A stretch of 30,694 nt of DNA, taken from positions 1 to 30,694 of the forward strand of contig NIVC01004939.1 of NCBI GenBank assembly GCA_002269645.1. Direction: 5' to 3'. The position numbers and the translations under genes are program-made. Numbering within the stretch: position 1 is the stretch's first letter; each line of letters opens with the position of its first letter. The stretch is from Macrostomum lignano (lineage: Eukaryota). The notes under the pieces were generated by a model that saw nothing but the letters and a program-made list of their open reading frames with translations, was not told where the DNA came from and ran no database searches. This document shows positions 480-24,742 of this stretch, one piece after another.

Positions 480-2347
480 ATGCAACCCGCTCGTTGTTCA
501 ATGCGCCTCTGCCGCAGTCCGCTGTTGGCGAGTCGCTTGTAACCTGCCAGCCTCTCTGCGACCTGCACATGCAGCAAGACTTCATCGAAGTAGACGAGGC
601 TGAACTCAGAGTAGCCACAAAGTGCAGCTCTTCAAGAAGTACCAGGAGCCCATGAGACTGATGCAGCAGAGACTCACATCCGACCTACAGCTGCTCGACG
701 ACACCTTTACCGACCTGAGAGAGACATTGGACAGGTGTCAAAGTGAGCTCGTTGCTGTCGTTACCAAGCAGCATGACCAGCTCATTGACCATCTGTTAAT
801 TGTCTCAGACATGAATGACTTTGAAAAAGAGCTAAAGAGACCAAGGATGACAAAAACACGAGGCAGGCCTTCCTCATCAACAAGAGCATGGAGAGATCGC
901 TGAAGACATTGCAGCTGGACTCAAATCTGGTGAGATTGGATGAGGAAAGTCAGACAGTCGAAATCGCAGCTTACCCGGATTTGAACTCGAGAATAAGAGA
1001 GCTTGAGACCGGACTGAGAGCTGAGTTGGTTTTACTCAGAAAACTCGCTGAGCAGTTTGATGCTGCTGCTGATTCTAGGCGTTTTGATGAAGAAATTGCA
1101 CTTCGAGCAGAAGAGAGAATAAGCAAGGCAGAGGTGCTAACAACTGCAGTATGCCTAACAGTGTGCAGCAACACCACAGGTTTTGTCATTGACCAGTCAG
1201 GTGTGATTAAGAAGGCTAATGGGATAGCAGCGACTGTATGCCACAGCCCGGTATCTTTGTAGCTGTCCTTCCTGAAGCTGATCAAGGACAGCAACTCCTC
1301 TCAGCGACAATAGATGATGAAAGCAGTTCAAGCCCGAATGACATGGCGTTTAAAATTTTGCTGCTCTCCGATGATGCAAAAGAAGTTGGACGCCTCACGT
1401 GCAGCTGGGCGGCCGATCAGCCGATCCGAGATCTACACTGCGACAATCAGCGACAGCTGCTGTTCATCTCTCAGGAGACATCGGTGACAGTGACCGACCT
1501 CAGCGGAGCTCTCAAGTCAAGAATCTGCATCACCGAGTTGCACGAAGGCGCTACGGAGCTGTGGTGCATTGCTGGAAACTGCGACAAGCTGTTTGCTCTA
1601 ATTGAAAAGCCAGATCGACATCTGGCCATTGTGGGAGTCGAGAAAGACTCTGGTAAGGTTCAACTGGCTTTTCCCATACCCAGTGGTTGTGAGCTCATGA
1701 GAGATGGTTCGAAAATGTCAGTCAGAGACCAGATGCTGTTCTTGTCTGATAGGTGGAATGTTTTCACTATCTGCATCATTACTAAGAAGCTGATCAACTC
1801 AAGGTCGTTCTATATGGGACCATGCCAGACGCCGGGCTTGTGCAGTGACACAAAAGACCATGCCTATGCCGTGGCTGGGGAGAACTCTGTTCCAGCTGAA
1901 TTTCAACTGGCTCCCTGCGCACCTTCACTCACACTGTGGCCGACATCAGAAACACCGCAGTACATCCTGTCCTCCGATGCAGGTGTTCAGTACAAAGCGG
2001 CAAAGGTGGAGAATGGTCGAGTAATTGTTACAACCTGGCGAATCGAATTTGTGAACAGAGATGACTTTGAATACGATGATGAATATGAAGACGAAGATCC
2101 AAATCAATATGAAGACGAAGATCCAAATCAATATGAAGACGAAGATCAAGATCAAGATGAAGACGAAGATCCAAATCAATATGAAGACGAAGATCCAAAT
2201 CAATATGAAGACGAAGATCAAGATCAAGATGAAGACGAAGATCCAAATCAATATGAAGACGAAGATCCAAATCAATATGAAGACGAAGATCAAGATCAAG
2301 ATGAAGACGAAGATCAAGATGAAGACGAAGATGAAGATGAAGACGAA
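480..2347 (+). pseudogene. Frameshifted intronless gene: N-terminal Cys/His (B-box-like) finger, coiled coil, beta-propeller-like region, acidic repeat tail (TRIM/NHL-like architecture); C-terminus interrupted by a LINE
   Basis: ATG at 480 (MQPARCSMRLCRSP). Coding-like sequence continues through four successive -1 frame changes: AVGESLVTCQPLCDLH (from 521), ORF 622-903 (helical, L/E/Q-rich), ORF 888-1262, ORF 1238-2464 (short beta-strand-like motifs, then E/D repeat). The family call is pattern-based only. Confidence 0.5.
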
Positions 2348-4118
2348 CGCACAGATATTCACCAGGATGCACGAGGACATTGCCGAGTACCTGGAAACAA
2401 AAAGAGCATCAGGAGACTGCAACATCGAAGACACAGAAACGGCAATCCTCCTAGACCTCCGTAAGGCATATCCGAGAGTGTGCAAGCCGATCCTGTGGGG
2501 AATCCTCCAAGCGTACAAGATGCCGCAAGAGACGATCGAAAAACTGAAAGACCTGCATGAACATACCGCGTATAAAGTGCAAGGCAAGGAGAAATCAAGC
2601 GAAACATGGCTACCCGAGCGAGGCTTACGCGAGGGATGCCCAACTTCCCCGATATTATTTAACATCTACCACCAGGCGAGCATCAGGAAAGCGGAAGAAA
2701 CTCGGGAGACAGAAGCGGCCAGCAGAGGATTAAGCTGCGGGGTGGAATGGACGTACTTACCTGGACACTCCTTGCCACCTCAGAGAATCAACCAGTACAA
2801 CTCGGAGATGCGAACGGTCAAGTGGACCTCATCGCTCTTTGCAGACGACACCACCATCCTAGGCAATGGCAGAGAACTGACGAGAAGCCTAACAACGACC
2901 AAAGAGAATATGAAGAAGTTCGAAGAACTGACAAATGACGAGAAACAGGAGGAGATGGCCCTAGGAACATCCGTCGGAGGTAAAACTCGCATCCTAGGGT
3001 CGTGGATGGATAGGAGATACGACACACAGCAAAGAATCCAGAGAGCCGCCAAAGCGTGGAATGCGATCAGGAAAAGGTTCCATCGATGCCGCCTGAAAAA
3101 GACCACACAAGCTAAAGTGGTCGAGGCGTGCGTGGAAAGTGTACTCCTGTTCCATGCGAACACCCGCCCGTTCCTGCTCGGCGAAATCAAAAAAATGCAA
3201 CAGTTCATCGACAAAACATACCGCAACATTTGGTCCAACAAGAGAATGGAACCGCTGCGCGAAATGGAAAGCCTAGGAGTAAATATGCAAGATATCCGCA
3301 ACGAACTAGGTGTTGTGTCATTAAGAACAAAGATTGAGAAAAGTCACCTAAAAAGGATTGGCCACGTCCTACGGATGGAAGACGACAGACAAATAAAGCA
3401 AGCCGTATTAGGGTGGTACAGAGGCCTGGAAAGGATCCCTAAGCGCAAAAAACGGAAAAACAACACCATATCCTACTGGAAGCGCCTCATCCGGGAAGCC
3501 GGTATGGAACCGCAAGACATCGAACGCCACGTTCTAGACAGGAAACACTGGCGGAACGTAGTACACCAGCGGACTGTACACCTACAAGAGTGGGAGAGAG
3601 TGCAAGGAAAAAAGGCCAAGACGGACAGTAACAACAGCCTGATCGAACGAAGTCAAGAACGGTACCACGTAAAAACGAACCCGAGAGAGGTTGGAGATGG
3701 CTTCAAATGCGAATACGAACTCTGCGGCAAAGTGTGTAAAAGCAAGGGCGGACTAACCATCCACCAAAAGAGGATGCATCGCGTGTTTAAAGAGCCGGTG
3801 AAATTCAGATGCCACAAATGCGACAAGGAGTTCCGACAGGAAGCGACCCTGGCAAACCATGAGAAGGTGTGCCAAGGCGAGACGGAAATAGATGCGTCAA
3901 GAGTAAAATGTCAGCAATGTGGAAGCACAATCGTAAAATCGAACCTAGCGAGGCACAGAAAGACATGTAAAGAACAACACCACAATCCACCGGAGATGGA
4001 GGAGAACAAGAGAAGAGCAAGAAAATACCGAAGGAAGACAGCAGAATGCGACAAGTGCGGAAGAACGTTATCGGCGACAAACATGGCGCGACACAAACGC
4101 ACTTGCGGTGAAGCCTGA
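2061..4118 (+). CDS. LINE ORF2 remnant (partial reverse transcriptase plus four C-terminal Zn fingers); the first ~95 codons are the host repeat read in another frame
   Basis: Uninterrupted 685-codon ORF with FADD catalytic motif. Fingers: CEYELC..H..MH, CHKC..H..C, CQQC..H..C, CDKC..H..C. Confidence 0.85.
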   Translation: MTLNTMMNMKTKIQINMKTKIQINMKTKIKIKMKTKIQINMKTKIQINMKTKIKIKMKTKIQINMKTKIQINMKTKIKIKMKTKIKMKTKMKMKTNAQIFTRMHEDIAEYLETKRASGDCNIEDTETAILLDLRKAYPRVCKPILWGILQAYKMPQETIEKLKDLHEHTAYKVQGKEKSSETWLPERGLREGCPTSPILFNIYHQASIRKAEETRETEAASRGLSCGVEWTYLPGHSLPPQRINQYNSEMRTVKWTSSLFADDTTILGNGRELTRSLTTTKENMKKFEELTNDEKQEEMALGTSVGGKTRILGSWMDRRYDTQQRIQRAAKAWNAIRKRFHRCRLKKTTQAKVVEACVESVLLFHANTRPFLLGEIKKMQQFIDKTYRNIWSNKRMEPLREMESLGVNMQDIRNELGVVSLRTKIEKSHLKRIGHVLRMEDDRQIKQAVLGWYRGLERIPKRKKRKNNTISYWKRLIREAGMEPQDIERHVLDRKHWRNVVHQRTVHLQEWERVQGKKAKTDSNNSLIERSQERYHVKTNPREVGDGFKCEYELCGKVCKSKGGLTIHQKRMHRVFKEPVKFRCHKCDKEFRQEATLANHEKVCQGETEIDASRVKCQQCGSTIVKSNLARHRKTCKEQHHNPPEMEENKRRARKYRRKTAECDKCGRTLSATNMARHKRTCGEA
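2087..2347 (+). repeat. Coding 24-bp tandem repeat organised as a 72-bp higher-order unit (A-A-B)x3, decaying into GAA/GAT/GAC triplets
   Basis: A=gaagacgaagatccaaatcaatat (EDEDPNQY), B=gaagacgaagatcaagatcaagat (EDEDQDQD). Order AAB AAB AAB over 2087-2302, then shorter units to 2347. Confidence 0.95.
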
Positions 4119-4497: not shown

Positions 4498-4806
4498 TGA
4501 TGTTTCCTGTTTAAAACACAAAATCTAAAAATACTGCTTCAACAATCATATATTTAGAGCGTTCCTAAACTAAAGCAGCTGAGCCTGAGCCAGCCTTAAA
4601 TCCAAATATACAAAAAATGAAAAAAATTGCTTGCTTGCTATTTTCTAAATATGAAAACGATAATCATTAGGTTTTATTGAGAAACGCCATAGCTCCACTT
4701 GTAATAGCACAGTACATTACAGCAAAGGATAAATTTAGTCTGCACAGACAGCAGAAATACTAGAAAAATGCAGTTTATTAAAAACTTCACTAGACGACAC
4801 GAGAGG

Positions 4807-5249
4807 TCACTGAGGCTCATCAGCGATAGCATGGGCCGGATCTGCCCACAAGAACACGGCATCGCCCATCGCGGTGAGAACTCTGCACAGTTTCGGATGA
4901 GCCGACACAGACTGCACCACCGAAGCCTGAGTCCTGACTCCAGCCCTGGCGGGCTCAGCTGCGGGATGCCTCAGCCTGCACCGCAGCTCGCCGCTGAGCA
5001 GATCCCAGCAGATCAGCTCGCCAGAGCCGCCAGCCGAGCCGGACAGAACCAGCGAGTCTCCCGCGGACACGTCGCATTCAACTGACAGATCGGCCACGCT
5101 GTGACCCGAGTAGCTGGCCAGCAGGTCGCCAGTGTCCCGGTCGATGAGGCGGAGTCTGGCATCGGAGCAGCTGGCCAGAATGCACCGGCCATCGCGGGTG
5201 GCGCACAGGCCGATCAGAGGCTTGCACAGATTGTCCTCTGCGAGGCGGC
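4807..5249 (-). CDS. WDR83: WDR83/MORG1 WD40-repeat protein, exon 3 (last)
   Basis: Acceptor ccccgcag|GC (phase 1). GRLAEDNLCKPLIGLCATRDGRCILASCSDARLRLIDRDTGDLLASYSGH aligns with recalled human GQLFSDYVGSPITCTCFSRDGQCTLVSSLDSTLRLLDKDTGELLGEYKGH. Stop at 4807. AATAAA on the minus strand at 4774-4779 and 4673-4678. Confidence 0.93.
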
Positions 5250-5644
5250 CTGCGGGGTTCATTTATGGCTCGGCTGTTGCCTCGATCTGAGACACTGCTC
5301 GAGTACAACTGCCCTGCAAAGTAAACTATGGTAGAACTGATAAGGAAAGAGACACTGCGCGTAGCAAAAGAGAAAAGTTGTTTACAAATCGCAAATCAAA
5401 GTCATGAGTCTCATTTCGAAATACTCAAGCTTGATTTGAGGTCAGGCCCAGCTCTCTTAAATAATGACTGCCTTCGGCGCATCGTCCACAGGTAGCGCTG
5501 AGGGCCATTCTTCCCAATCGGCTCACGATCCTGACTGACGCAGGAATGAACAGCGGTCCTTGTGAGGTCTACATGTACACCAAATGGCACATATATACTT
5601 TTTAACAAAACAGATTTCAAACCAAAGCCCCTCAGCAACGGCAC

Positions 5645-5880
5645 CTTTCCTGGCATCGTAGCAGCGCAAGCGTCCATCCAGACTAGCCGTATAGATTCGC
5701 CAGGAGTGAACAGCCACCGCCGTGACGGAGTCCCTGGCATCGGTGAGCAGCTGCACAGGCGCTTGAGCTTTACTGCGCAGATCCCACAGGCGGACTGTGC
5801 AGTCCACTGAACCGCTGGCCAGCAGGGTGGCGTCCGGACTGAAGTCCAATGCGCCAACTCGAGCCAGGTGGCTGCGGTAT
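5645..5880 (-). CDS. WDR83: WDR83/MORG1 exon 2
   Basis: Acceptor gcgcag|AT (phase 2), donor AAAG|gtgccg (phase 1). Encodes KYRSHLARV...SGSVDCTVRLWDLRS...DARDSVTAV...SLDGRLRCYDARKG. Confidence 0.93.
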
Positions 5881-6085: not shown

Positions 6086-6420
6086 TAGATGACTGGAGAT
6101 TCTCAGATGACTGGGGACTCTCATAGATGGACTGGGGACTCTCATAGATGGACTGGGGACTCTCATAGATGGACTGGGGACTCTCATAGATGGACTGGGG
6201 ACTCTCATAGATGACTGGGGACTCTCATAGATGGACTGGGGACTCTCATAGATGACTGGAGACTCTCATAGATGGACTGGGGACTCTCATAGATGGACTG
6301 GGGACTCTTATAGATGGACTGGGGACTCTTATAGATGGACTGGGGACTCTTATAGATGACTGAGATTCTCATATGACTGGAGAGTCTTATAGATGCCTGG
6401 AGATTCTCTAAGATAGACTG
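6086..6420. repeat. 20-21-bp minisatellite (gatggactggggactctcata, ~17 units) in WDR83 intron 1
   Basis: Near-identical head-to-tail units in the centre, degenerate at both ends, no spacers. Confidence 0.95.
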
Positions 6421-6474
6421 GCCTTTCTAGAACAAACAGAAGACACTTAAAAAGCAAAGCCTCTAAGCCCTCAC

Positions 6475-6752
6475 TTTCGCACGGCGGTACCGCTAGCCGT
6501 GTCCCAATAAGCCACCATTTTATCCTCGCCCCCGCTAGCCAGATTGGCATTGTCGCAGGCGCAGGCCACAGCCAACACCTCCTGACCGTGGCCAAGATAC
6601 GACCTGAGCAGCAGGGATTTGGCTGGATTCCACAGCTTCAAAGACTTGTCCGCGCCGCCAGTAAGGCAGTAATTGCCGTCGGCGTTAAATCTGACGCAAC
6701 GAACGGCGCCCTGGCCGCACACTGTGCGGCATTGCAGCTGCTCTGGTGTTGT
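6475..6752 (-). CDS. WDR83: WDR83/MORG1 first coding exon (no in-frame ATG at its start)
   Basis: Acceptor tttcag|ACA at 6753/6752, donor AA|gtgagg at 6475/6474. TTPEQLQCRTVCGQGAVRCVRFNADGNYCLTGGADKSLKLWNP matches WDR83 CGQGAVRAVRFNVDGNYCLT. Exons of 278+236+443 = 957 nt give 318 codons plus stop. Confidence 0.92.
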
Positions 6753-6787
6753 CTGAAAGTTTTTATTTTAAAATTTTTGTGTGGTAC

Positions 6788-7175
6788 TTTTAGTAGCTTT
6801 CTGTTAGTAGTAACAAAATTTTTTTACATGTTTTGATGTTGCCTACTAATAGTAGACTTCTTGAATATTATTTTTAAATGTTTGGAGTAAAACAAGAAAA
6901 CTATCTAGTGATTCTATTATGAATCGTCAAGTATCGATCTATCTATCTACCTATCCATTTATCTCACCATCTATCCATCTATCTATCTATCTATCTTCTA
7001 TCTATCAATCTATCTCTATTTTTCTAGCTTTTAAATTTTAGTATGCTACTTATAGTAGTATTCTATCGGTAGAATTAAAAAATTCAGTCGATATTTTGAT
7101 GTCGCTTACTAATGGTAGACTGTACATTTTTTTGTTTCGAGCAAAACAAGAGAACCATATAGTGACCTACTTACA
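6788..7175. repeat. Diverged direct duplication (copies ~263 bp apart) flanking a (CTAT)n microsatellite
   Basis: ttttgatgttgcctactaatagtagac...gagtaaaacaagaaaactatctagtga (6831-6911) vs ttttgatgtcgcttactaatggtagac...gagcaaaacaagagaaccatatagtga (7094-7165). Confidence 0.7.
6937..7019. repeat. Imperfect (CTAT)n microsatellite
   Basis: Runs of ctat/ctatc. Confidence 0.9.
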
Positions 7176-8205
7176 GTAGTGTATACGCATATTTTTAAAT
7201 GAAAAAGTGCAGTTGTAAAAACTTGCAGCATTTTGTCGGTAAAACTCCATGCATTAGATATGAATAAAATGAATTAACCTTTGATTTATTAATAATTTAC
7301 AATCAAGACAAACAACATAAATCAACAGTTTAAGATAGAATGGATCCGTCAAAATACTGCGTAACACTGGATGTTTCTTAAAACAATTTTTTTTCGCGAA
7401 AATCATTATTGAACAACAGGCTACATTTGGGAGTAACTAGAATTTCCGAATGTACAAAATTACGATTTTTAATAACAAATATTGTAAGATTATTAAATTA
7501 ATGTGTGGTAACTTGCAAAATAGAGTTGAGAGCAGATTGCTGACCCAAGTAAGCCAAGAACAAAAAGAAGCCATTTAAGATAAGAAAATCACTAATTGCT
7601 GTTCTTGATTACCATAGAATATTTTATTTAAGTCCAACTACTTACCGATCAATAAGCAAGTAGCATGCAACGAGAATGCTGTTTAAAAATTGAATAGACA
7701 CTAGTAGAATAATAAATCAATCATGCAAGTCAAAGTCTGTCTGCTTTTGTGAATTAAGAAATAAAAGTTCAAATTTGGAAGCTGAAAATATGTTTATTAA
7801 AAACTACAAGCACTGGCAATTCTCAGTCTTGAATACAAAAAAAATTTTCAAGGATTACTATCAAAGCATGCACATTGCACAAACACATCTCAATTCAGGG
7901 GTCCATTATTTGACAATTTAGACATCGTTTTAAAAAGGTCGAACGATTTTGTTTGTACGCAGTGCTGTACTCATACAGAGCGCTCACTCGGGGTGTACAG
8001 CGGCTTCTGTGTCTTAGGCTTGACCCTAATGGCTGTGAATCTCGTGAATCTCGTGAAACACAAATATTTAGAATCAAAATACGCACACCTGCAGACTATA
8101 AATATCCATATAACTGAAATAAGCCAGGCTAAGCAGTATAAAATGTTCAGCTACTTTTCCAACAGCATGGGGATCAGCTGAAGGAGCCGTCAGTTCATCT
8201 CAAAA

Positions 8206-8502
8206 TCAAACTCTGGCGGCTTCCGCCTGTCGCGCCACGCTGGAGCTGGATCCCCCGCTGCTGACGCTGCCGATAGCTGCTGCTCGCTTTGCAGCGGCTG
8301 CGGCGGCGAGAGCCGAGGCGTTGCGCTGGTGACTGGCCGTGGCTGCCGAGCGCAGCTGCGCCTCGATGCTCTGCGTCTCGTCAATGAGCATTCGCTGGCT
8401 TCGCTGCAGCAGCGGCTCCTGCAGTCGGCAGTGCGCGTGGTGACGCAGGTAATAGCCGAACCAGAAGCGGAGGAACTGGGCCGAGTGCTGCGGCTTCAGA
8501 AC
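8206..8502 (-). CDS. MTMR2: Myotubularin-related phosphatase, exon 3 (last)
   Basis: Acceptor accccag|GTT (phase 0). VLKPQHSAQFLRFWFGYYLRH resembles MTMR2 [21 protein letters not shown]. Ala/Ser-rich tail, TGA at 8206. AATAAA on the minus strand at 7793-7798. Confidence 0.88.
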   Translation of the reverse strand, partial: VLKPQHSAQFLRFWFGYYLRHHAHCRLQEPLLQRSQRMLIDETQSIEAQLRSAATASHQRNASALAAAAAAKRAAAIGSVSSGGSSSSVARQAEAARV

Positions 8503-8528
8503 CTGGGGTGAATAGGGGAAGGTGATGG

Positions 8529-8537
8529 ATCTATCTG

Positions 8538-8573
<36 letters not shown>

Positions 8574-8606
8574 CCTATTTATCTATCTACCTATCCACCT
8601 ATCTCT
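8529..8606. repeat. (CTAT)n microsatellite in myotubularin intron 2
   Basis: Long perfect ctat run with degenerate flanks. Confidence 0.93.
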
Positions 8607-8644
8607 CATATCAGTGAGTACCTCAAGCACTAAACTAAGCTCAC

Positions 8645-8966
8645 CTGGTAGCGGTTAGGTGCGTAATGCGGATTAGTGTAGTCCATGACAGCAGAATTGA
8701 CAACAGACCAGAGCGAGTGCGTGTGCGGCCGAATCTTGGCCCTCTCCTGGTCGCAGTTGCCCAGAAAGGTGCCGAACCGATTACTATAGAGATGCTCCAA
8801 GATAGTAATCAGCAGGTGCTCGTTAAACTCGAAAGCATTTGGGAACTGCTGGGTGAGCTGCCAGACGCACTCGATGAACTGCAGGAACACCGGAGACCGC
8901 TCGCTGTCAGACGGGTTGTCCTCTAGGAAGCCAATTCTCTTGCCAAACTGGTGACCCATTGAGCAC
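8645..8966 (-). CDS. MTMR2: Myotubularin-related phosphatase, exon 2
   Basis: Acceptor ggcaag|G (phase 2), donor CAG|gtgagc. Encodes [13 protein letters not shown]...[26 protein letters not shown]...[13 protein letters not shown]. Confidence 0.93.
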
Positions 8967-9156
8967 CTTGCCGGTTAGTTTGAGTAGAGTGTATAATGTA
9001 ATTATTCATTAGACGCAGAGAAGCATAAACTGCCCAAGGGATCCTTGGGATTTAAGAGTTCTACCAATTGTCAAATTTGAGTAAATCTGTACATATTGGA
9101 GTGTGCAGATCTCTGCAAATTCTGAGGGTTAGTGAGGCTCAGCACTTTAGATGGTA

Positions 9157-9455
9157 GTGGTTTGTAGCCTAGTGGTTTAGAGCATCGGATTCACGACTCA
9201 AAGGTTGGGGGTTCGATTCTCGACCCACTCTGAACAATTTGTGTCCTTGATTTAGAAAGACACTTATTACTCTGCATTGCTTCAGTTCACCCAGCTGTAA
9301 AATGGTTACCAGCATTAGCTAAGGGTAATTGAGGATGTGTGTGGCGACCCACCAGTCCTTGGACTGAACAGCCGTACGCAGCCTTAGCTGTTGGTTGCAC
9401 GTTTGCTCATGAAGGCAGGTGTAATCAATTGTTATTATACAATAAATTATTGCAA
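9157..9455 (+). mobile_element. tRNA-derived CORE-SINE in myotubularin intron 1 (antisense to the gene)
   Basis: Pol III A box tagcctagtgg (9165-9175) and B box ggttcgattct (9210-9220). Then tgtgtccttg...aagacactta...tgcttcagttcacccagctgtaaaatgg (~9239-9306), resembling the MIR CORE (tgtgaccttgggcaagtcactta...tgcctcagtttcctcatctgtaaaatgg). AT-rich tail. 3' end approximate. Confidence 0.75.
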
Positions 9456-9592
9456 ATCGTTAAAAGGCGAGCTACCCACGAGAAATCGATCGGGAGAAGA
9501 GAGTTGCTGGTATTTTATTTGATTTTGAACTAATATGTACTTTTCCATTAGAGAATCAGGCATTGAAGTGTTTTCATCATAAAACTACTCAC

Positions 9593-10971
9593 CACTCTTT
9601 CTCAATGAGAGCCTCAAAGCCTTTCACAGTACGATAGTACGGATCCAAGCACAGCATGGACAGGGCAGTCAGCTGAGCAGTCCGATCCCAACCATCCGAG
9701 CAGTGCACCAGCACCGAATACTTCTCCGATCCGACTTTGTGCACAATGTACACAACTCCAACTAGAATTTGTCTGATATGTCCCAGCCATTGGGTGTTCT
9801 CTAAGCAGCTCAGAAACCTCACAGACTCCAATGCTGGCCAGCAGATCTCTCTCAACTTTCTAAGCGACTCGCGCATCACGTGAATGTTCTGAATATCTAC
9901 GAATGCCACCTCAACGCTGTTGTTATAATCCGCCACGGCTTCGTAGCCGCCACCTTTGCCTCTGTTGGCTACGGCGTTAGTCTTCGGTCTGGCATCGATA
10001 ATGCACAGCGATGTTGTCTGTCCATTGTTATTCAGTATCTTGGCAAGAAACCGTTCGTCTTCTTGGCAACGTTTGCCAGACAGGCCAACCATAGGCTGGG
10101 AGCATCTGGTGATTGATGCCCTTGTGTCTCTGTCTAACCAACTAAGAACTGGCACCCTGCTGCGGCTTCTGTAGGCGGCGCATTTGCGCAAATCTTCATC
10201 AGTAATCTCCGTTGGAATAGCAAACAGTTGCGGATAAGTTGGACAAAGACTATAGTCTCTATTCAATTCACAAACTTTCCAAACTGAGCCTTGAGTTTTA
10301 ACGCCTAATCGTTCAAATTCGGCCATAGGATTGTACACGTCCCAGCCTTGCTCCGTGAGCTGCGGCATGGCGTTCCAGTAGTCTATGGCAAAGAGTTGCA
10401 GATTGGGACCGAGACTGCAATTACCGCTCGGCCTGAACGTCAGTCCTTGCAAGCGTTCAAATATGTTCTGACGGGAATTATTCGCCGTGGAAGTTTTACT
10501 CAGCTGTAGGCGGAGCGAGAAGAAATCTTTGCACGTGACCTCGATGCCATATTTGTCTCCACGGCTGCTGGCGCCGCCAAACTTCTCCAACTTGTTGATG
10601 CTGCCAAGTGGAATGTCAACTGTTTCTAGAGGACTCTTAGTTGAGGAAAAGTGCAAGCGATAGTTAGTTACTAACAGACTGCCCATGATAGCTCGCTCAT
10701 TCAGTGGCTCCACCTTGGACACGTACTGCTCACTTTCCTCAATGGTGATGTGTCGTACTTCTCCTGGAAGCAAATCCACTTCAGGGAAATTCATTCTGCC
10801 ACCGCTGCCTCCTGCGGCTCCACCGCCGCCAGCTGCACCGCCACCTGCGCCCCCACTTCTGCCAGCCGGGCCCACACTTGACAAAGAAGATTCTGAACGT
10901 CCAGACGGAGTTGCAGCTCTGGGCAACTGGCCGCCACTGTTAGCAGCTTGCTCAACTGTCTGATTTGACAT
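9593..10971 (-). CDS. MTMR2: Myotubularin PI(3)P/PI(3,5)P2 phosphatase (MTM1/MTMR1/MTMR2 group), exon 1: PH-GRAM plus catalytic domain
   Basis: ATG at 10971. LCPTYP, YRSRSRVPVLSW, RCSQP, DARP, IQNIHVMRESL and an intact active-site loop VHCSDGWDRTAQL. Donor TG|gtgagt. Exons of 1379+322+297 = 1998 nt give 665 aa. The exact paralog name is uncertain. Confidence 0.95.
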
Positions 10972-11759
10972 TTCTATAATTGATCTGCAAGTAAGTCAAT
11001 CGATTATCTAAAGCAGCTGATATTTCTATATACATGTAGGTAGGTATCATAAGCACACCACAATAAACATATTTTGGTGCCCCCTATAGGAAAAAGTTGT
11101 AAAACCACAGACGGCATCCAATGCATTTTTGAAATTTTTCTAAAGCACAGTGCCCTTTCCTGCTGGCTACTTCTCCAGCAAATAAATATATATAGAAGGG
11201 CCTAATGCCTCTGTGGAAGGGGCCTATACACTTGTTATTTATAATGCTTAGAGATGTTCTGAAATTTTAATTTCGATTTTCTAAATTTCAGAATTTTTAA
11301 GAGTAAATTTCAATTCCAAAAAATCATCCAATTAAAAATCTCTAAAAAGTGGCTAAATATAAACTGATTTATGCTACATATACATGTATTTTGTTTTGCA
11401 TGAGCATAAAAATAAAAAAGTGAGTTTTAAAGCATGCATCTGCAGGTTTTCAACATTTATTCCAATAGGGTTGGTGCCTAAGACAGATATTCCTAGATTT
11501 AACAGGTACAAAAATGTGCATTTGCCAGGACGTTTAAAGTAATAGCATGCATTAAGTTGCTATTTAAATAAATTTAAATAAATATCATGTATCAAGGCAA
11601 TCAAATTTTCAATGTTATTTCTATATTATAGCTATATTATAGCAGCTATATTATATACAGACTATAATTGAATTCAAATTCAAATAGTGCTATTTTGTCA
11701 AATGAAAGCCGATTGTCAAATAGTCATAGAAAATAATCATTTTAATAATATATAAACAT

Positions 11760-18854: not shown

Positions 18855-20219
18855 ATGGCTTCAACTACTAATTCAACGGCCGCGGATGCGACAAACGACG
18901 CTGCGGGCCCCGACAACTCAAATACAAGACCGACCTACGACAAGATGATTGGACTGGAGCAGACCAGCCTGGGCCAGCCGCAACACCATCATCATGTGTA
19001 CCAGCAGCCCCAGCAGCAGGATCGAGCTCCAGCGCCAAAACCGGTCAAGATTCAGCAGTACACGCCCAACCGGGAATTCGACGTCTGGATCAAGGCTCTC
19101 GAAGAGCGATGCGAGCTCAACGGAATCGTTGACAACAGACGAAAGAAGGCGGACGTCCTTGTGAATTTGGACATCGCCACCACCTACCCCGCAGTTGTCA
19201 GAATGGAGCTGCCAGATAATCTGACGTTTGGTGAGTTCAAACAGCGATTATCTGAATGCTTTACACATGTTGCCGACACACTGGAGTACTGGGAGCAGTT
19301 CCGAAGCTGCCAGCAGGGCAAGAACAAGAATGTTGACGACTACAGCGACCGACTAATTGCTCTGGCTGATCGAGCGTTCCCACATTTTACCCCGGTTCAG
19401 AAGCAGGCTGAACTGGTGGATCAATTCACTGTGGGAGTGCGGATTGCTCAGTCGGCCCGAGAACAGCTCATCCTGGTGCGACTGCCGAATCTGACCGCAG
19501 CGAGGAGGGCCATGCTACACCTGGAGACAGCAGCTAGTCTGGCTCAGCGTGTAGCACCACCGCCAGCAGCGAGGCATGTCCGGGTCCTGGAAGATGACGA
19601 CAGTCAGACGCCCACTGCGGTGCAACATGACGCCAAGTCATCTCGGCCTGAGGAAAACTGGTTGCGGGAAGTCATGGTACAACAAGCCGAGACATTGCAA
19701 GAGCAGCGACGCCTACTTGAAACTTTGAGTAACGAGATGCGAGAGTTCTACTCTCGGGGATCGCGCGATAACGACGCCCTGGAGCCATGGGAACCTCGCC
19801 ACCAGCCGCGGGACTTGTGGGGCCAACGCTCCAGATGTCTGGTACCCTCGACTCCTTGCTGCAGCATCGACGGAAGTGCCCAATTTACGACACCTGGCAC
19901 GCGTATGGTGCCGCAGCAACCGTTCCATCAACTTCAGCAACCACAAGACGGCAGCAACCTGCCGCCGAGAACGCCGCCAGCAGGAGGTCAACGTCAGCAG
20001 CAGCAGCAGCTGCAGCAATGGTCGAGTTCGAGGCCGCCGCCCTATCAGCTGCGGCAGCAGAATGCCATGTGTTACAGGTGCAATTGCGAGCACCGCGCCG
20101 ATGAGTGCCTGCACCGACGGTCGGCCAGCACCGCATCCCAGCGCAACAGCAGCTCGGGAAACGGGACGGCTGGATGCGCCATCGGGGGCAGCGCCATCCA
20201 GCAGCCGAGCCAGCACTGA
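18855..20219 (+). CDS. gag: Gag (capsid-like helical domain, Q-rich region, one Zn knuckle CYRCNCEHRADEC)
   Basis: 454-aa ORF following the PBS, with a retrotransposon-gag-like core (FDVWIKALEERCELNGI...YSDRLIALADRAFP...LVDQFTVG). Confidence 0.9.
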   Translation: MASTTNSTAADATNDAAGPDNSNTRPTYDKMIGLEQTSLGQPQHHHHVYQQPQQQDRAPAPKPVKIQQYTPNREFDVWIKALEERCELNGIVDNRRKKADVLVNLDIATTYPAVVRMELPDNLTFGEFKQRLSECFTHVADTLEYWEQFRSCQQGKNKNVDDYSDRLIALADRAFPHFTPVQKQAELVDQFTVGVRIAQSAREQLILVRLPNLTAARRAMLHLETAASLAQRVAPPPAARHVRVLEDDDSQTPTAVQHDAKSSRPEENWLREVMVQQAETLQEQRRLLETLSNEMREFYSRGSRDNDALEPWEPRHQPRDLWGQRSRCLVPSTPCCSIDGSAQFTTPGTRMVPQQPFHQLQQPQDGSNLPPRTPPAGGQRQQQQQLQQWSSSRPPPYQLRQQNAMCYRCNCEHRADECLHRRSASTASQRNSSSGNGTAGCAIGGSAIQQPSQH

Positions 20220-23200
20220 AGTCCCCGCCGCGGACTTTAGTCACTCAGCAGGCCACTGCTGAGACCGCCTCCGCTGCACCTATACAGCCATTAGCACCCA
20301 AGCGACCTCGGAGAGACCCGTTTCTAACTGGTGAGATTCAGGGCCGCTATTTTGCTTTCTTGCTTGATACCGGGTCCAAGTGCGAAGTCCTAGGATTCAG
20401 CACCTGGCACCGCCTATGTACTGACGACCCGACCTTGCGTGGCCAAATCGAGCCCTGCCTTCAACGTATCGTGACCTACAATGGAGAGCCTATTCAAATG
20501 GCAGGCCAGCTATCTATTAAAGTGAAAATTGGTAATTTCGAGCCTACAGTCAAGTTTCTGCTAGCAAAAGGATCGCATGACAACATTCTGGGTTTCGAGT
20601 TCCTGGAGAAGTACAGCACATCACTGGACCTCGCCGCCGGAATGCTGTTTTTCAAGGACGGCACTGCCGCACCACTTCGCTATATGCGAACTGAAGCTAC
20701 AACGTGCAGAATTTACACCGCCGAGAGCACTACGGTGCCACCATTATCATCTGCCCGAATCAAAATCAAATTAGCAAAAGGACAAAAAGAAAACCAGGAT
20801 ACACCCGCAGTGATCGAGCCGCTGAAACCGGCTCGGCGTGAAGAAGATGTGCAGCACCTGGACGCCACGCCTGCCCTGATTTCCATGGCTAATGGAGAAG
20901 GCGCTATCAAAATGATCAACCATGGTACTACAGCCATCAAAGTGCGAGCGAATGCCCTAGTCGGGATTGCTAGACCAATCAGACTGCCCGAGCTACATTT
21001 CTTCCCGCTGCTGAAATCAGAAGACTCTGTCAATCAAATCCAAGACAAGGATCCCGATGCCTGGATTAAGGAGATTGATATCAGTGAGGATCTTTCCAAA
21101 GACCAGCGCGCTCAAGTCATTGAGCTATTGAGAAAGTACAAGACCATCTTCTCGCAGGGGCCACACGATCTCGGCCGAACTCATCTGGTCACCCACAACA
21201 TCGTACTGAAGGACAAAGATCCGGTGCATCTCCCAACGCGAAGGATCCCGCCGCACCTGCTACCCAAGGTGGACCAGTTACTCGACGATCTGCTGGCCAA
21301 AGGCGTGATTCGACTGAGCTTCTCCAGCTATAACACCCCGCTGGTGATCATCCCGAAGAAGGACGGCAGCCTACGAATTGTGCAAGATTTCAGGAGTCTG
21401 AATCAAAAGTGTGAGTACTTTCCGTACTCGATTCCTAACATCCAAGAAGCATTCGCTAGCCTCGAAGGAAGCCAGCTATTCAGCACGTTTGACTTGAACA
21501 GCGGCTACTATCAGATTCCACTGCGTCCAGAGGATCAAGAGCTGACTGCCTTCGCCACGCTGCACTGCGGACAATTTGCCTACAATGTTATGCCTATGGG
21601 ACTAAGTTCAGCTCCAGCTAGCTTCATGCGACTGATGAACGCTGTGCTCAACGGGATCGCCTACAAAAGTGCAATAGCCTATCTGGATGACGTCATCGTC
21701 TACTCTAAGAAATTCAACGATCACCTACAACATATGGAAGAAGTTTTCAAACGGGTTCCAGAAGCAAATCTAAAGTTCAAAGGCAAGAAGTGCCATCTAT
21801 TTCGGGCCAGTATAAACTATCTGGGACATGTGGTAACAAAAGATGGAATCAAGACCGACCCAGCTAAGATCGAAGCGATTCAAACCTGGCCAAGACCAAG
21901 GACAGCTCGCCAACTTAAAAGTTTTGTCTGCACGTGCGCTTATTATGCCAAATTCGTACCTAGCTATGCAGAACTTGCTGCTCCGCTCCACGATCTGATT
22001 AAGGAGAAGAGGATTAGAAACTTGAATTGTCTATGGGGAAAAGCCCAGCAAGATGCGTTTGATCAGCTCAAGGCCGCAATGACTTCGACGACAGTGTTTG
22101 CGTATCCGCAGTTCAGTGAAGATCCGGATGTAATGTTTATCCTGGACACGGATGCTTCTGCAACCAGAATCGGAGCCTGTCTGAGCCAACGCCAAGCTGA
22201 CGGAGTTGAGCGACCAATTGGCTATTTCTCCCGGCGACTGAAACTAGCCGAAGCCCGATATCCGATTACTAAACAGCAACTCTTGGCAGTCGTAGATGGA
22301 ATGCGACACTTCAGATTCTACCTGCTGGCCAAGAAGTTTATCTGCCGAACCGATCATGCCGCATTAACCTGGATCTTAAGGCGAACTCAGCAAGAAGGAA
22401 TCTTCGGACGATGGCTGCAGAGACTAAGCAAATTTGAGTTCAAGATCCAGCATCGCAAATCGAGTCAGCATCAAAACGCCGACAGTCTCTCGAGACGGCC
22501 GGAGGACGACGCCGAATGCTTGGAGGAGGCTCAGCGCAAGGCAGCTGATGAGGACCAAAGTAAGCAGCCAGCCGCGATAACTGGCGCAGCAGCGCCGAAG
22601 GTCCACGACAGCAGCCACCCTAGTCCTCCACCGAGCAAGAAGCCGTCGACCCGCTGTAAGCGACAGAAACCGCCAACTAAGCCGAAGGAGTCCAACGGCG
22701 AGGCTACGCCGCCAGCAACCCCGACAGCCGACAGCAAGCCGCTGACAGAGCTGCACCCGCCGGCGACGAAGCTGAGGCCATCAGCCAGCCGTTACGATGA
22801 CTCGCAGAGGTCGCCTACCAGTTTTAGTAGCACGACATGTTGCCCGTCAAGGAGCCGCCGACTACTAGCTGGAGACGGCACAGACAGCGACCACAGCGCA
22901 GCCAGAGAGGACAGCTGCCAACCCGCTCGCTGCCCAAAGTTTAAGAAGGTGAGATTCAGCAGCGACGCGGACAGCTCTGCTGACTCATCATCAACTGCTG
23001 ACCGATCTGAATCCGACAACAATGACGCCAAAGCTACCGACAAGGATCGACCTTCGGGCACATCAACGACCCGGCAACCGGCCAGAGTAGCGATCGTGCG
23101 GAGGGAGCTCCAGACCCCGAACCATGCCACCATAGCCGAAGCCGCGCCAACTAATTTGACTAATCGACGTTCAACATTGAATCTAACTGATCACATCCCG

Positions 23201-24742
23201 AGGCCAGTCACTCGTGAGGAGCTCCAGACTCATCAGCGTGCTGACTCTGCCATCGCCATGATGATCAACCTTTTGGAAAGCCGACAGCCAAAACCGCCAC
23301 TAAATCAGCAATTGAATATGACGCGAGACGAACGAAACTTACTAGCGTTCTACGAGCAGCTCGAAGTCCGAGACGATGGACTATTAGTTATTCATCTCGA
23401 CGATATTGGCGAAGAGGAGAAAGCGCGGATCGTTCTGCCGAAGAGCCTCGACCCCACTGTGTTTGCCGACCTGCACGGTTCGCCCTACTGCGGACACATG
23501 GGCCGAGACCTCACCATCGCAAAGGTGCGCGAAAGGTTCTGGCGACCTGCCCTGGCCAAGGCAGTGTCCGACTATGTTGCTTCCTGCCAGACCTGCACTC
23601 AAAGCAAAGGATGGCGACGAATTCCGGCGCATGTACAGTCGTTTCCGGTCTGCAAAATCTATGGGCAATGTGCAATCGATATCCTGGGCCCCACTGGAGA
23701 CCTGACAGACTGAGGAAACAAGTACATCCTAACCTACGTCGATACTACGTCGAAGTATCCATTCGCCTTCGCCATGAAAAATCAGCGCACCAAGACAATT
23801 ATAACTCTGCTGCAGGAACAAGTCTTCCCAATCACCGGAATTCCCGCGTGGATCCATTCGGACCAAGGCAAGCAGTTCACTGGGCACGAGTTTAGACATT
23901 TCTGCGAAGTCTATGGCATCCGGCAGACAACGACGCCACCATATTCGCCCTGGGCCAATGGACAAGCTGAATCGTGCAACAAAAACATCAAGAAGGTGCT
24001 CACTTGTCTTCTCGAAGATCATCAACAGTGGGACAAGATGCTGCCAGCCGCTTTGACAGCCCTGCGATCAGCTGTCAATCGTACGACGGGATTCTCGCCG
24101 CATTACGTCGTCTACAGAGTGCCTTATTGGTACCCGATCGATAACACCCTAGACCGCCTGGACGTATCTCCGGACATCCCCGAGTACATCGCGAAGCATC
24201 AGCGCAGACTGGCCGAGACCGAGAGAATTGTGCGACAGTGATTGCGAGCCGAGATCCAACGCCGCGAAGAATACTACGAGAACCGACCCAAGCCCGTGGA
24301 ACTGCAGCCCGGAGATCTGGTCTGCCTGGCCAACCCGAAGCTCGAGTTGGGTGAGCTGCCCAAGTTCCACCGGCCATACAAGAGTATGTACAAGGTCAAC
24401 AGAAAGGTCGGTGAAGTAGCTTATTGGATCCAGCCAGCAACTGCCCGACGAGGACACCCCGCCGAAATGTTGGTACATCGCAACAACATAATTAAGGTGC
24501 CGCAGATGATGGCGGATCGACCACAGGAGCCACCGCGCCAAACAGAGCGGCCAATGCTGCCCTATGAGTCGAGCGAAGACAGCGAAGTCGACCCAGCCAA
24601 TCAGCCCACGCCAGAGCAGCCGGCCACAACTCAGCTAGACCTGCGAGGCAGTCAGCTGTTTGAGCCAAGCCTCCGCCATCCGGAAGTGCTCGCCGAAGGC
24701 GACCCGGATCTGCCTGACATCGGCATGGAAATGGAGATCTGA
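20105..24742 (+). pseudogene. pol: Pol (protease, RT, RNase H, long disordered linker, integrase) broken by two in-frame TGA codons
   Basis: LLDTGS (PR), FDLNSGYYQI, MPMGL and YLDDV (RT), DTDAS (RH), H-X6-H...C-X2-C and IDILGP/SDQG/NGQAE (IN). Stops at 23711-23713 and 24239-24241. ORFs 20105-23713, 23774-24241 and 24242-24742 share one frame. Confidence 0.95.
20156..20202 (+). promoter_or_regulatory. -1 programmed ribosomal frameshift signal (G GGA AAC plus hairpin)
   Basis: Heptamer GGGAAAC at 20156-20162 in the correct gag phase. A 6-nt spacer precedes an 8-bp perfect stem gctggatg (20169-76)/catccagc (20195-202). Pol is in the -1 frame. Confidence 0.88.

What the first reader, a model, noticed from the sequence alone, without database searches (positions are those of the whole stretch)
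6723..6770. WDR83 has no start codon: a spliced-leader AUG would supply it exactly in frame
Seen: the first coding exon starts after a strong TTTCAG acceptor in phase 0, with an in-frame TAA upstream (6768-6770). The first in-frame ATG (DKMVAY) would delete more than one WD repeat. Two upstream candidate donor exons fail: ATG 7190 with gtaagt at 7174 is phase 1, and the 33-nt exon near 7647-7679 contains an in-frame TGA. Established: flatworm spliced leaders end in AUG, which can act as the initiator. Inference: SL-AUG + ACA ACA CCA gives MTTPEQLQCRTVCGQGAV, a 319-aa protein close to human WDR83 length, making translation dependent on trans-splicing.
Basis: partly seen in the sequence, partly recalled or inferred. 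Interest (0 to 1): 0.7.

Follow-up and report, generated by a model that had tools for sequence, protein, structure and literature searches.

The report
Flatworm gene borrows spliced-leader start codon
The WDR83 gene of the flatworm Macrostomum lignano has no start codon of its own and most likely takes it from the AUG at the end of the trans-spliced leader, a mechanism already known in flatworms, so this is an ordinary new example.

Summary
The window is Macrostomum lignano contig NIVC01004939.1. A three-exon WDR83 gene lies on the minus strand (6752-6475, 5880-5645, 5249-4807). Its first coding exon starts right after a TTTCAG acceptor. An in-frame TAA lies 15 nt upstream, and the first in-frame genomic AUG is codon 80.

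The M. lignano spliced leader ends in ...UUGCAUG. The acceptor fits the published trans-splice motif [T/C]TNCAG. SL-AUG joined to the exon reads MTTPEQLQ..., a 319-aa protein whose N-terminus lines up with WDR83 orthologues. Four deposited gene models, from two annotation sources and two gene copies, start at or next to this acceptor with no Met and no upstream exon.

No RNA evidence could be reached, so trans-splicing at 6752 is inferred (about 0.8), not shown.

ATG 7231 is open and in phase 0 with the same GTAAGT donor (7174), in both gene copies. It looks non-coding: 30% GC, intron-like divergence and no homology.

Use of the SL AUG as initiator has been known in flatworms since Cheng et al. 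2006 and is noted for Macrostomum. Novelty and interest are low. The practical value is for annotation.

The parts
6753..6758 (-). 3' splice acceptor TTTCAG, the proposed SL trans-splice acceptor
   Evidence: Read. It matches the M. lignano trans-splice acceptor motif [T/C]TNCAG (PMC8629364). It and the 25 nt upstream are identical in the second gene copy, L002.
6768..6770 (-). In-frame TAA stop, 15 nt upstream of the exon
   Evidence: The translation reads ...QKF*NKNFQ|TTPEQ.
6475..6752 (-). WDR83 coding exon 1 (278 nt, starts in phase 0, has no initiator AUG)
   Evidence: It is homologous to WDR83 orthologues from its third codon onwards.
5645..5880 (-). WDR83 coding exon 2 (236 nt)
   Evidence: The spliced product is 100% identical to GenBank PAA46303.1.
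4807..5249 (-). WDR83 coding exon 3, including the TGA stop
   Evidence: The annotated gene end is 4807.
4774..4779 (-). AATAAA polyadenylation signal of WDR83, 28 nt after the stop
6516..6518 (-). First in-frame genomic AUG (codon 80, DKMVAY)
   Evidence: Using it would delete 79 residues carrying WD repeat 1 and most of repeat 2.
6730..6732 (-). First genomic AUG of the exon, out of frame, with a 15-codon ORF
   Evidence: A ribosome that skipped the SL AUG would meet this AUG first.
6759..7792 (-). AT-rich putative outron, from the upstream gene's AATAAA (7798-7793) to the acceptor
   Evidence: The 8205-6753 spacer that contains it is 31.7% GC, against 59-65% in the exons. This stretch contains (TATC)n at 6932-7015, flanked by a ~130-nt direct duplication. 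The 8300-6450 region is about 90-92% identical to copy L002.
7169..7231 (-). Rival feature: ATG 7231, a 19-codon open frame (7231-7175) and GTAAGT donor (7174-7169), in phase 0 with the acceptor
   Evidence: It is open in copy L002 too. It has 30% GC, and both of the 2 differences between copies in its 57 nt change the amino acid. No deposited gene model uses it.
8206..10971 (-). Upstream same-strand gene, a myotubularin-related phosphatase (MTMR1/2-like) with its own ATG at 10971
   Evidence: The same gene order is found in copy L002.

Best explanation
**Proposed mechanism.** The WDR83 (MORG1) pre-mRNA of Macrostomum lignano is SL trans-spliced at the TTTCAG acceptor, so the exon begins at window position 6752 on the minus strand. 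The 35-nt spliced leader CGGTCTCTTACTGCGAAGACTCAATTTATTGCATG is joined directly to ACAACACCA. Its 3'-terminal AUG becomes codon 1 of a 319-aa ORF, MTTPEQLQCRTVCGQGAV..., behind a 32-nt 5' UTR. The genome encodes no usable initiator, so full-length WDR83 can only be made from the trans-spliced mRNA.

**Shown here:** the species, the SL sequence (from the literature), the gene structure, the frame, the lack of a genomic AUG, the fit to the acceptor motif, and gene models without a Met.

**Inferred:** that the SL is actually joined at 6752, and that ribosomes start at the SL AUG. The second point rests on analogy with Schistosoma, where it was shown experimentally.

**Possible operon.** The gene may be the downstream member of an MTMR-WDR83 polycistron. 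About 1 kb separates the upstream AATAAA from the acceptor, and part of that is repeats.
For: 1. The window is M. lignano Mlig_3_7 contig NIVC01004939.1. The gene product is PAA46303.1, 'BOX15_Mlig030218g4, partial'.
2. The M. lignano SL ends in ATG (PMC8629364). All reported flatworm SLs do (PMC12582326).
3. The acceptor TTTCAG fits the top motif at 21,754 mapped M. lignano trans-splice sites, [T/C]TNCAG. The 1453-nt spacer holds five such motifs. Three lie close to the upstream gene's stop codon (8178, 8114, 8089), one follows its AATAAA (7782), and the fifth is this acceptor.
4. The SL AUG is in frame and the ORF runs 319 codons. The next in-frame AUG is codon 80 and follows two out-of-frame AUGs.
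5. Orthologue alignment shows homology starting at exon residue 3. Haliotis and Paralvinella proteins have only 2-3 more N-terminal residues.
6. Four deposited models start without a Met at or next to the acceptor and have no upstream exon. These are GenBank copies P0001 and P0002, starting PEQLQ, and UniProt P0003 (TTPEQ) and P0125 (FQTTPEQ). The GenBank annotation was built from RNA-seq assemblies cut at mapped SL-read peaks (PMC5730564).
7. The gene is under purifying selection. Coding divergence between copies is 0.94% (5 synonymous, 4 non-synonymous changes), against 4-6% in introns and about 8-10% upstream.
8. There is precedent. In S. mansoni the SL AUG is in frame in 28% of trans-spliced mRNAs and more than 40 cDNAs need it (Cheng 2006, via PMC9851317). 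In E. granulosus 143 of 187 SL clusters are full length with the SL ATG. A Macrostomum genome paper calls the SL's final ATG the 'translation start codon' (PMC10468722).
Against: - No SL-exon junction read, cDNA or peptide could be retrieved. The exact 319-aa protein is not in the protein collection. The exon pattern is absent from metagenome contigs. No held supplement lists the gene.
- A phase-0 cis candidate exists and is intact in both copies: ATG 7231-7175 with the GTAAGT donor. Phase-0 ATG..GTRAG combinations are somewhat more frequent than chance (3 against 0.5 expected).
- Donor-like GTRAG sites in an outron are thought to disfavour trans-splicing (PMC5832876).
- The deposited CDS starts 6 nt inside the exon (6746), where there is no AG. 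The annotation therefore does not pinpoint 6752 by itself.
- The SL AUG has U at position -3, a weak Kozak context.
Confidence: 0.8

Rival explanations
1. A cis-spliced 5' exon supplies the start codon. Transcription would start upstream of 7231. The exon ATG 7231-7175 (MLQVFTTALFHLKICVYTT) would be spliced from the GTAAGT donor at 7174 to the same TTTCAG acceptor in phase 0, giving a 337-aa protein.
For: The frame is open and in phase 0, the donor is a consensus GTAAGT, and A is at -3 of the ATG. The ORF and donor are intact in copy L002. Phase-0 ATG..GTRAG combinations exceed the chance expectation. Flatworm acceptors are often shared between cis- and trans-splicing (PMC12582326).
Against: - GC content is 30%, the same as the surrounding spacer, against 59-65% in the real exons.
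- Both differences between the copies change the amino acid. The 3.5% divergence is intron-like, against 0.94% in the CDS.
- The peptide is hydrophobic and unlike any orthologue N-terminus.
- None of the four deposited models, which were built from RNA-seq or transcript evidence, contains it.
- The other two candidates are weaker. The 7109 donor is lost in L002, and 6970 lies inside a microsatellite.
Confidence: 0.06
2. The gene models are incomplete at the 5' end. A more distant or unrecognised cis exon, not found by my enumeration between 8300 and 6753, would carry the AUG.
For: GenBank flags the protein as 'partial'. I enumerated only single ATG-bearing exons within the region 8300-6753.
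Against: - The upstream gene on the same strand ends at 8206, which leaves little room.
- Models from two annotation efforts and two gene copies stop at the same acceptor.
- The orthologue alignment leaves room for only a few missing residues.
- The acceptor fits the trans-splice motif, and 30-39% of M. lignano genes are trans-spliced, with conserved genes enriched among them.
Confidence: 0.06
3. No Met is supplied. Translation would start at the internal AUG (codon 80) or at a non-AUG codon. Alternatively, this copy is a decaying duplicate.
For: M. lignano carries several fragmentary or chimeric WDR83 copies: P0121, P0122, P0123 and locus L003, which lacks exon 1.
Against: - Exon 1 is conserved more strongly than the introns, and two full-length copies share the same gene order.
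- Residues 1-79 include many positions invariant among orthologues.
- Two out-of-frame AUGs precede codon 80.
Confidence: 0.05
4. The SL is trans-spliced, but at the nearby GAGCAG| acceptor, so the exon starts at 6737. That site is also in frame and gives MLQCRTVCGQ..., a 314-aa protein.
For: The AG at 6739-6738 lies 15 nt downstream, so the frame is kept. The deposited CDS start (6746) lies between the two sites.
Against: GAGCAG does not fit [T/C]TNCAG and sits in GC-rich coding sequence. UniProt models begin at TTPEQ or FQTTPEQ, upstream of this site.
Confidence: 0.03

Closest known systems
Schistosoma mansoni / S. japonicum mRNAs that use the SL 3'-terminal AUG as initiator Met (Cheng, Cohen, Ndegwa & Davis 2006, J Biol Chem 281:733; cited in PMC9851317, PMC12582326, PMC5832876)
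   Same: The SL ends in AUG. The acceptor sits directly in front of the conserved N-terminal coding sequence. The SL AUG is in frame. No genomic AUG could give a full-length protein.
   Different: The host is a free-living macrostomorph, not a neodermatan parasite. Here neither the SL junction nor initiation at the SL AUG has been shown experimentally. The Trichobilharzia WDR83 orthologue (P0037) has its own Met and a 22-residue N-terminal extension, so SL dependence of this particular gene is not conserved.
Echinococcus granulosus SL-bearing cDNAs (PMC3510090)
   Same: In that study 143 of 187 SL clusters are full length only when the SL ATG is taken as the start. In some, the SL AUG is needed to match conserved orthologue N-termini. 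I used the same argument here.
   Different: Those cases rest on sequenced SL-containing cDNAs. This one rests on genome sequence and deposited models.
Macrostomum SL trans-splicing annotation (Wudarski 2017, PMC5730564; Ustyantsev & Berezikov 2021, PMC8629364; Wiberg 2023, PMC10468722)
   Same: Same species or genus, SL and acceptor motif. Wiberg et al. label the SL's final ATG the 'translation start codon'.
   Different: None of the texts I could read names WDR83 or counts how many M. lignano genes need the SL AUG. GenBank simply flags the protein as 'partial'.
slORFs in nematodes, Oikopleura and trypanosomes (slORFfinder, PMC9851317)
   Same: The start codon is contributed by the spliced leader.
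   Different: Those are mostly near-cognate NUG codons inside the SL, and often give alternative or out-of-frame ORFs. Here a terminal AUG starts the main conserved ORF.
Vertebrate and other invertebrate WDR83/MORG1 genes
   Same: The protein is orthologous, a WD40 beta-propeller of about 305-320 aa with 42-47% identity over 93-99% of its length.
   Different: Those genes encode their own AUG and a short, variable N-terminal extension.

Membership tests
Flatworm mRNAs initiated at the spliced-leader 3'-terminal AUG | The host has an SL RNA whose leader exon ends in AUG | tested here: met
   The species was identified as M. lignano. Its SL is CGG...TTGCATG (PMC8629364). There is no SL gene in the window itself.
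Flatworm mRNAs initiated at the spliced-leader 3'-terminal AUG | The first coding exon begins at a 3' splice acceptor of trans-splice type | tested here: met
   TTTCAG at 6758-6753 fits [T/C]TNCAG and is conserved in the second copy.
Flatworm mRNAs initiated at the spliced-leader 3'-terminal AUG | The SL AUG is in frame with the main conserved ORF | tested here: met
   SL plus exon gives a 319-codon ORF, MTTPEQ....
Flatworm mRNAs initiated at the spliced-leader 3'-terminal AUG | No genomic AUG can give the conserved N-terminus | tested here: met
   There is an in-frame TAA at 6770-6768. The first in-frame AUG is codon 80. One caveat remains: a phase-0 cis candidate at 7231-7175 exists but looks non-coding.
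Flatworm mRNAs initiated at the spliced-leader 3'-terminal AUG | SL-containing transcripts are joined at that acceptor | not testable with these tools
   No M. lignano RNA data could be reached. The support is indirect: models built from SL-read peaks start 6 nt inside the exon and are flagged partial.
Flatworm mRNAs initiated at the spliced-leader 3'-terminal AUG | Ribosomes initiate at the SL AUG in vivo | not testable with these tools
   This was shown for Schistosoma by Cheng et al. 2006, which I could only cite through. It is not shown for M. lignano.
WDR83 / MORG1 orthologue | Full-length similarity to WDR83 proteins across Metazoa, with WD40 propeller architecture | tested here: met
   The best hits outside Macrostomum are all WDR83: E 1e-78 to 1e-66, 42-47% identity, 93-99% coverage. 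WD40 and beta-propeller Pfam hits cover residues 15-261. The alignment has 60 invariant columns.
Downstream gene of an M. lignano operon (Ustyantsev & Berezikov criteria) | A same-strand upstream gene, both genes trans-spliced, and a repeat-adjusted intergenic distance below 1 kb | tested here: inconclusive
   The MTMR gene lies upstream on the same strand, and the order is conserved in L002. The distance from its AATAAA (7798-7793) to 6752 is about 1.04 kb, including an 84-nt microsatellite and a ~130-nt duplication. The trans-splicing status of both genes is unknown.

The most novel reading that the evidence does not exclude
Full-length WDR83 in M. lignano can only be translated from the trans-spliced mRNA, in both intact gene copies. 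If so, the SL acts as a shared protein-coding first exon in Macrostomorpha, which my background knowledge (not tested here) places as an early-branching flatworm lineage. That would push the initiator role of the SL AUG back well before the parasitic Neodermata, where it has been documented. It would also mean that many of the 'partial' proteins in the M. lignano GenBank annotation are in fact complete.
Probability: 0.65. Interest if true: 0.3.

Novelty: new member of a known kind. Interest (0 to 1): 0.2.

Why it matters
The main value is practical.
- Gene finders and database submissions for SL-bearing flatworms lose the initiator Met when the SL is trimmed. Conserved proteins then appear as 'partial', as PAA46303.1 does here.
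- Adding the SL AUG at mapped trans-splice sites would complete such models.

There is a modest biological point too. This is a clear case in a free-living macrostomorph, and it supports an old origin for the coding role of the flatworm SL AUG. For such genes protein output is strictly tied to trans-splicing. M. lignano has transgenesis, so this can be tested directly. It is not a new mechanism.

Tried and rejected
- **Direct RNA or protein evidence.** An exact look-up of the 319-aa MTTPEQ... protein did not find it in the collection. A scan of metagenome contigs for the exon 5' end gave 0 hits. A homologue search with the exon-1 peptide returned only an unrelated Logan transcript, P0246, which has its own ATG after a 292-nt 5' UTR.
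- **Published gene tables.** Supplements of PMC8629364, PMC5730564 and PMC5816591 hold no entry for Mlig030218 or WDR83. A full-text search for Mlig030218 gave 0 papers. Wasik et al. 2015 is not held.
- **SL RNA gene or SL-like sequence in the window.** Nothing scored above shuffled controls. I rejected the 'TTATTG-ATCG-GTAAGT' resemblance at 7655-7640 as chance.
- **Reading the upstream gene's locus tag.** The aim was to see whether MTMR and WDR83 share a transcriptional unit. The homologue search did not return the M. lignano protein. My reconstructed 663-aa model is not an exact match to any deposited protein.
- **A constant offset in the deposited CDS starts.** The shift is +6 nt for WDR83 in both copies, and +6 nt from the ATG for MTMR. 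The acceptor-to-start distance is +6 nt at a third gene, but +5 nt with a stop codon directly upstream for P0122. No single rule fits, so this is left unexplained.
- **A THAP-like domain at the N-terminus of the chimeric copy P0122.** Pfam does not support it.

Full report
**What the window is.** A homologue search with the spliced product returned a 100% identical GenBank protein, PAA46303.1, 'hypothetical protein BOX15_Mlig030218g4, partial [Macrostomum lignano]'. It sits on a 30,694-bp contig. The contig is NIVC01004939.1 of assembly GCA_002269645.1 (Mlig_3_7), which is the window itself.

**The observation.** The minus strand reads ...AAAATTTTAAAATAAAAACTTTCAG|ACAACACCAGAGCAGCTGCAATGCCGC....
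- Translation in the exon frame gives ...QKF*NKNFQ|TTPEQLQCRTVCGQGAV. The TAA is at 6770-6768 and the exon starts at 6752.
- Three exons with GT..AG introns (6752-6475, 5880-5645, 5249-4807) give a 957-nt ORF of 318 codons plus TGA. It is identical to the deposited protein apart from that protein's first two missing residues.
- All non-Macrostomum best hits are WDR83/MORG1, at 42-47% identity over 93-99% of the length.
- On an mRNA made of SL plus exons, the SL AUG opens a 319-codon ORF.
- The next AUGs are out of frame, at 6732 (15 codons) and 6550. The first in-frame genomic AUG is codon 80, at 6518-6516.
- Starting at codon 80 would remove WD repeat 1 and most of repeat 2, with many invariant residues.

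**The spliced leader.** M. lignano has one 35-nt SL, CGGTCTCTTACTGCGAAGACTCAATTTATTGCATG. In the SL RNA gene it is followed by GTAAG.
- Between 30% and 39% of genes are trans-spliced, and conserved genes are enriched among them.
- The top motif at 21,754 mapped trans-splice acceptors is [T/C]TNCAG (PMC8629364; PMC5730564). TTTCAG fits it.
- SL-AUG joined to ACA ACA CCA gives MTTPEQLQ...
- In the orthologue alignment, homology starts at exon residue 3. Haliotis (MAEDITENL...) and Paralvinella (MSNEIVDKL...) are only 2-3 residues longer at the N-terminus. A one-residue addition from the SL therefore gives a normal WDR83.

**What the deposited annotations say.** Four models begin at or next to this acceptor without a Met and without any upstream exon.
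- GenBank P0001 (this contig) and P0002 (second copy, contig NIVC01001024.1) start at PEQLQ.
- UniProt P0003 starts at TTPEQ, and P0125 starts at FQTTPEQ.

The GenBank annotation came from genome-guided RNA-seq assemblies whose 5' ends were cut at peaks of mapped, SL-trimmed reads. ORFs were then called with TransDecoder (PMC5730564). A 5'-partial ORF is only possible if the transcript model starts downstream of the TAA at 6768, which means within 22 nt of the acceptor.

The deposited CDS starts at 6746, 6 nt inside the exon, where there is no AG. The neighbouring MTMR gene shows the same shortfall: its ATG is at 10971 and its deposited start is 10965. A third gene shows 'atacag|acagcc|ATGGAG'. 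I take this as clipping in the deposited models. One gene, P0122, does not fit a constant rule, so it stays unexplained.

**The second copy.** Locus L002 has the same MTMR-WDR83 order.
- The acceptor and the 25 nt before it are identical.
- Coding divergence is 0.94% (5 synonymous and 4 non-synonymous changes). Introns differ by 4-6% and the upstream spacer by about 8-10%.
- Both copies therefore look functional, and both lack a genomic start codon.

I enumerated every ATG between 8300 and 6753 whose open frame reaches a GT in phase 0. There are 23 such combinations, close to the 18 expected by chance. Three of them have GTRAG donors, against 0.5 expected (P about 0.035).
- The strongest is ATG 7231 followed by 19 codons, MLQVFTTALFHLKICVYTT, and then GTAAGT at 7174. 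It is intact in L002.
- Against it: GC is 30%, like the spacer (31.7%) and unlike the exons (59-65%).
- Both differences between the copies change the amino acid, and the 3.5% divergence is intron-like.
- The peptide is hydrophobic and matches no orthologue N-terminus.
- No deposited model uses it.
- The 7109 donor is lost in L002, and the 6970 candidate lies in the (TATC)n microsatellite.

I keep this rival at about 0.06.

**Direct evidence.** I could not reach any. The details are in the tried-and-rejected field. Trans-splicing at 6752 and initiation at the SL AUG are therefore inferences, held at about 0.8.

**Comparison with what is known.** The mechanism is well established.
- Cheng et al. 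(2006) showed that the flatworm SL AUG can act as initiator Met. [quoted passage not shown]
- All reported flatworm SLs end in ATG (PMC12582326).
- In E. granulosus, 143 of 187 SL clusters are full length with the SL ATG. That paper argues the usage is conserved within Neodermata (PMC3510090).
- A Macrostomum genome paper labels the SL's final ATG the 'translation start codon' (PMC10468722).

This locus meets the four sequence-level criteria of that class. The two experimental criteria could not be tested. The Trichobilharzia orthologue has its own Met and a longer N-terminus, so SL dependence of WDR83 is lineage-specific.

**Context.** The upstream same-strand gene (10971-8206) is a myotubularin-related phosphatase. 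Its AATAAA is at 7798-7793, about 1.04 kb before the WDR83 acceptor. That stretch includes a microsatellite and a ~130-nt duplication. By the published repeat-adjusted 1-kb criterion, an MTMR-WDR83 operon is possible but undecided.

**Verdict.** It is a new example of a known kind. Its value is mainly for annotation, and for dating SL-AUG usage to free-living macrostomorphs.

Noticed in passing
window 6746 vs 6752; 10965 vs 10971; L002 10001 and 19453; L003 10001: Deposited GenBank CDS starts lie 5-6 nt inside the exon or past the true ATG. WDR83 starts at PEQ instead of TTPEQ, and MTMR starts at NQT instead of MSNQT. There is no AG at those positions, so this looks like clipping in the submitted models. 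No single rule fits all four genes.
   Followed up: partly
window 10969-10990 (-): The upstream MTMR gene has its own ATG (10971) 13 nt after a TTGCAG acceptor-like site (10990-10985). If it were trans-spliced there, the SL AUG would be out of frame and would open an 11-codon ORF overlapping the real start. A TTATAG sits 2 nt before the ATG.
   Followed up: partly
window 6086-6421: Intron 1 of WDR83 holds a 21-nt tandem repeat (TAGATGGACTGGGGACTCTCA on the + strand), 16.6 copies at 90% match, with a 145-nt higher-order period.
   Followed up: partly
window 6788-7165; L002 9382-9714: A (TATC)n microsatellite (6932-7015) is flanked by two direct copies of a ~130-nt segment (6788-6911 and 7036-7165, 76-85% identical). 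The microsatellite is about 330 nt longer in the second gene copy.
   Followed up: partly
window 1238-4118 (+): A non-LTR retrotransposon-like ORF pair lies convergent with the 3' end of WDR83. The 685-aa ORF has RVT_1 and a C-terminal C2H2 zinc finger. The preceding 408-aa ORF has no Pfam hit.
   Followed up: partly
window 18855-24241 (+): A Ty3/gypsy-type LTR retrotransposon. A 454-aa ORF has no Pfam hit. A 1202-aa ORF carries protease, RT, RNase H and the integrase zinc-binding domain. The integrase core is in a separate following ORF (23774-24241), so pol is interrupted near 23713.
   Followed up: no
L003 (NIVC01001101.1) and L004 (NIVC01000620.1): There are further WDR83-derived copies. 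P0122 joins an unrelated 5' exon to WDR83 exons 2-3, and no exon 1 lies within the 24.6-kb locus fetched (about 10 kb on either side of the gene). P0121 and P0123 are short fragments. These are probably partial duplicates or pseudogenes in this polyploid genome.
   Followed up: partly
window 5636-5645 (-); models P0002, P0003: Intron 2 has a weak donor (GTGCCG). Two deposited models read through it (…ARKGAVAEGLWFE…) and end early, which suggests intron retention or mis-assembly. P0124 starts at an ATG inside intron 2.
   Followed up: no
window 7782-7798 (-): A YTNCAG acceptor-like motif (TTTCAG, ending at 7782) sits 10 nt after the MTMR AATAAA (7798-7793). No ORF follows it.
   Followed up: no
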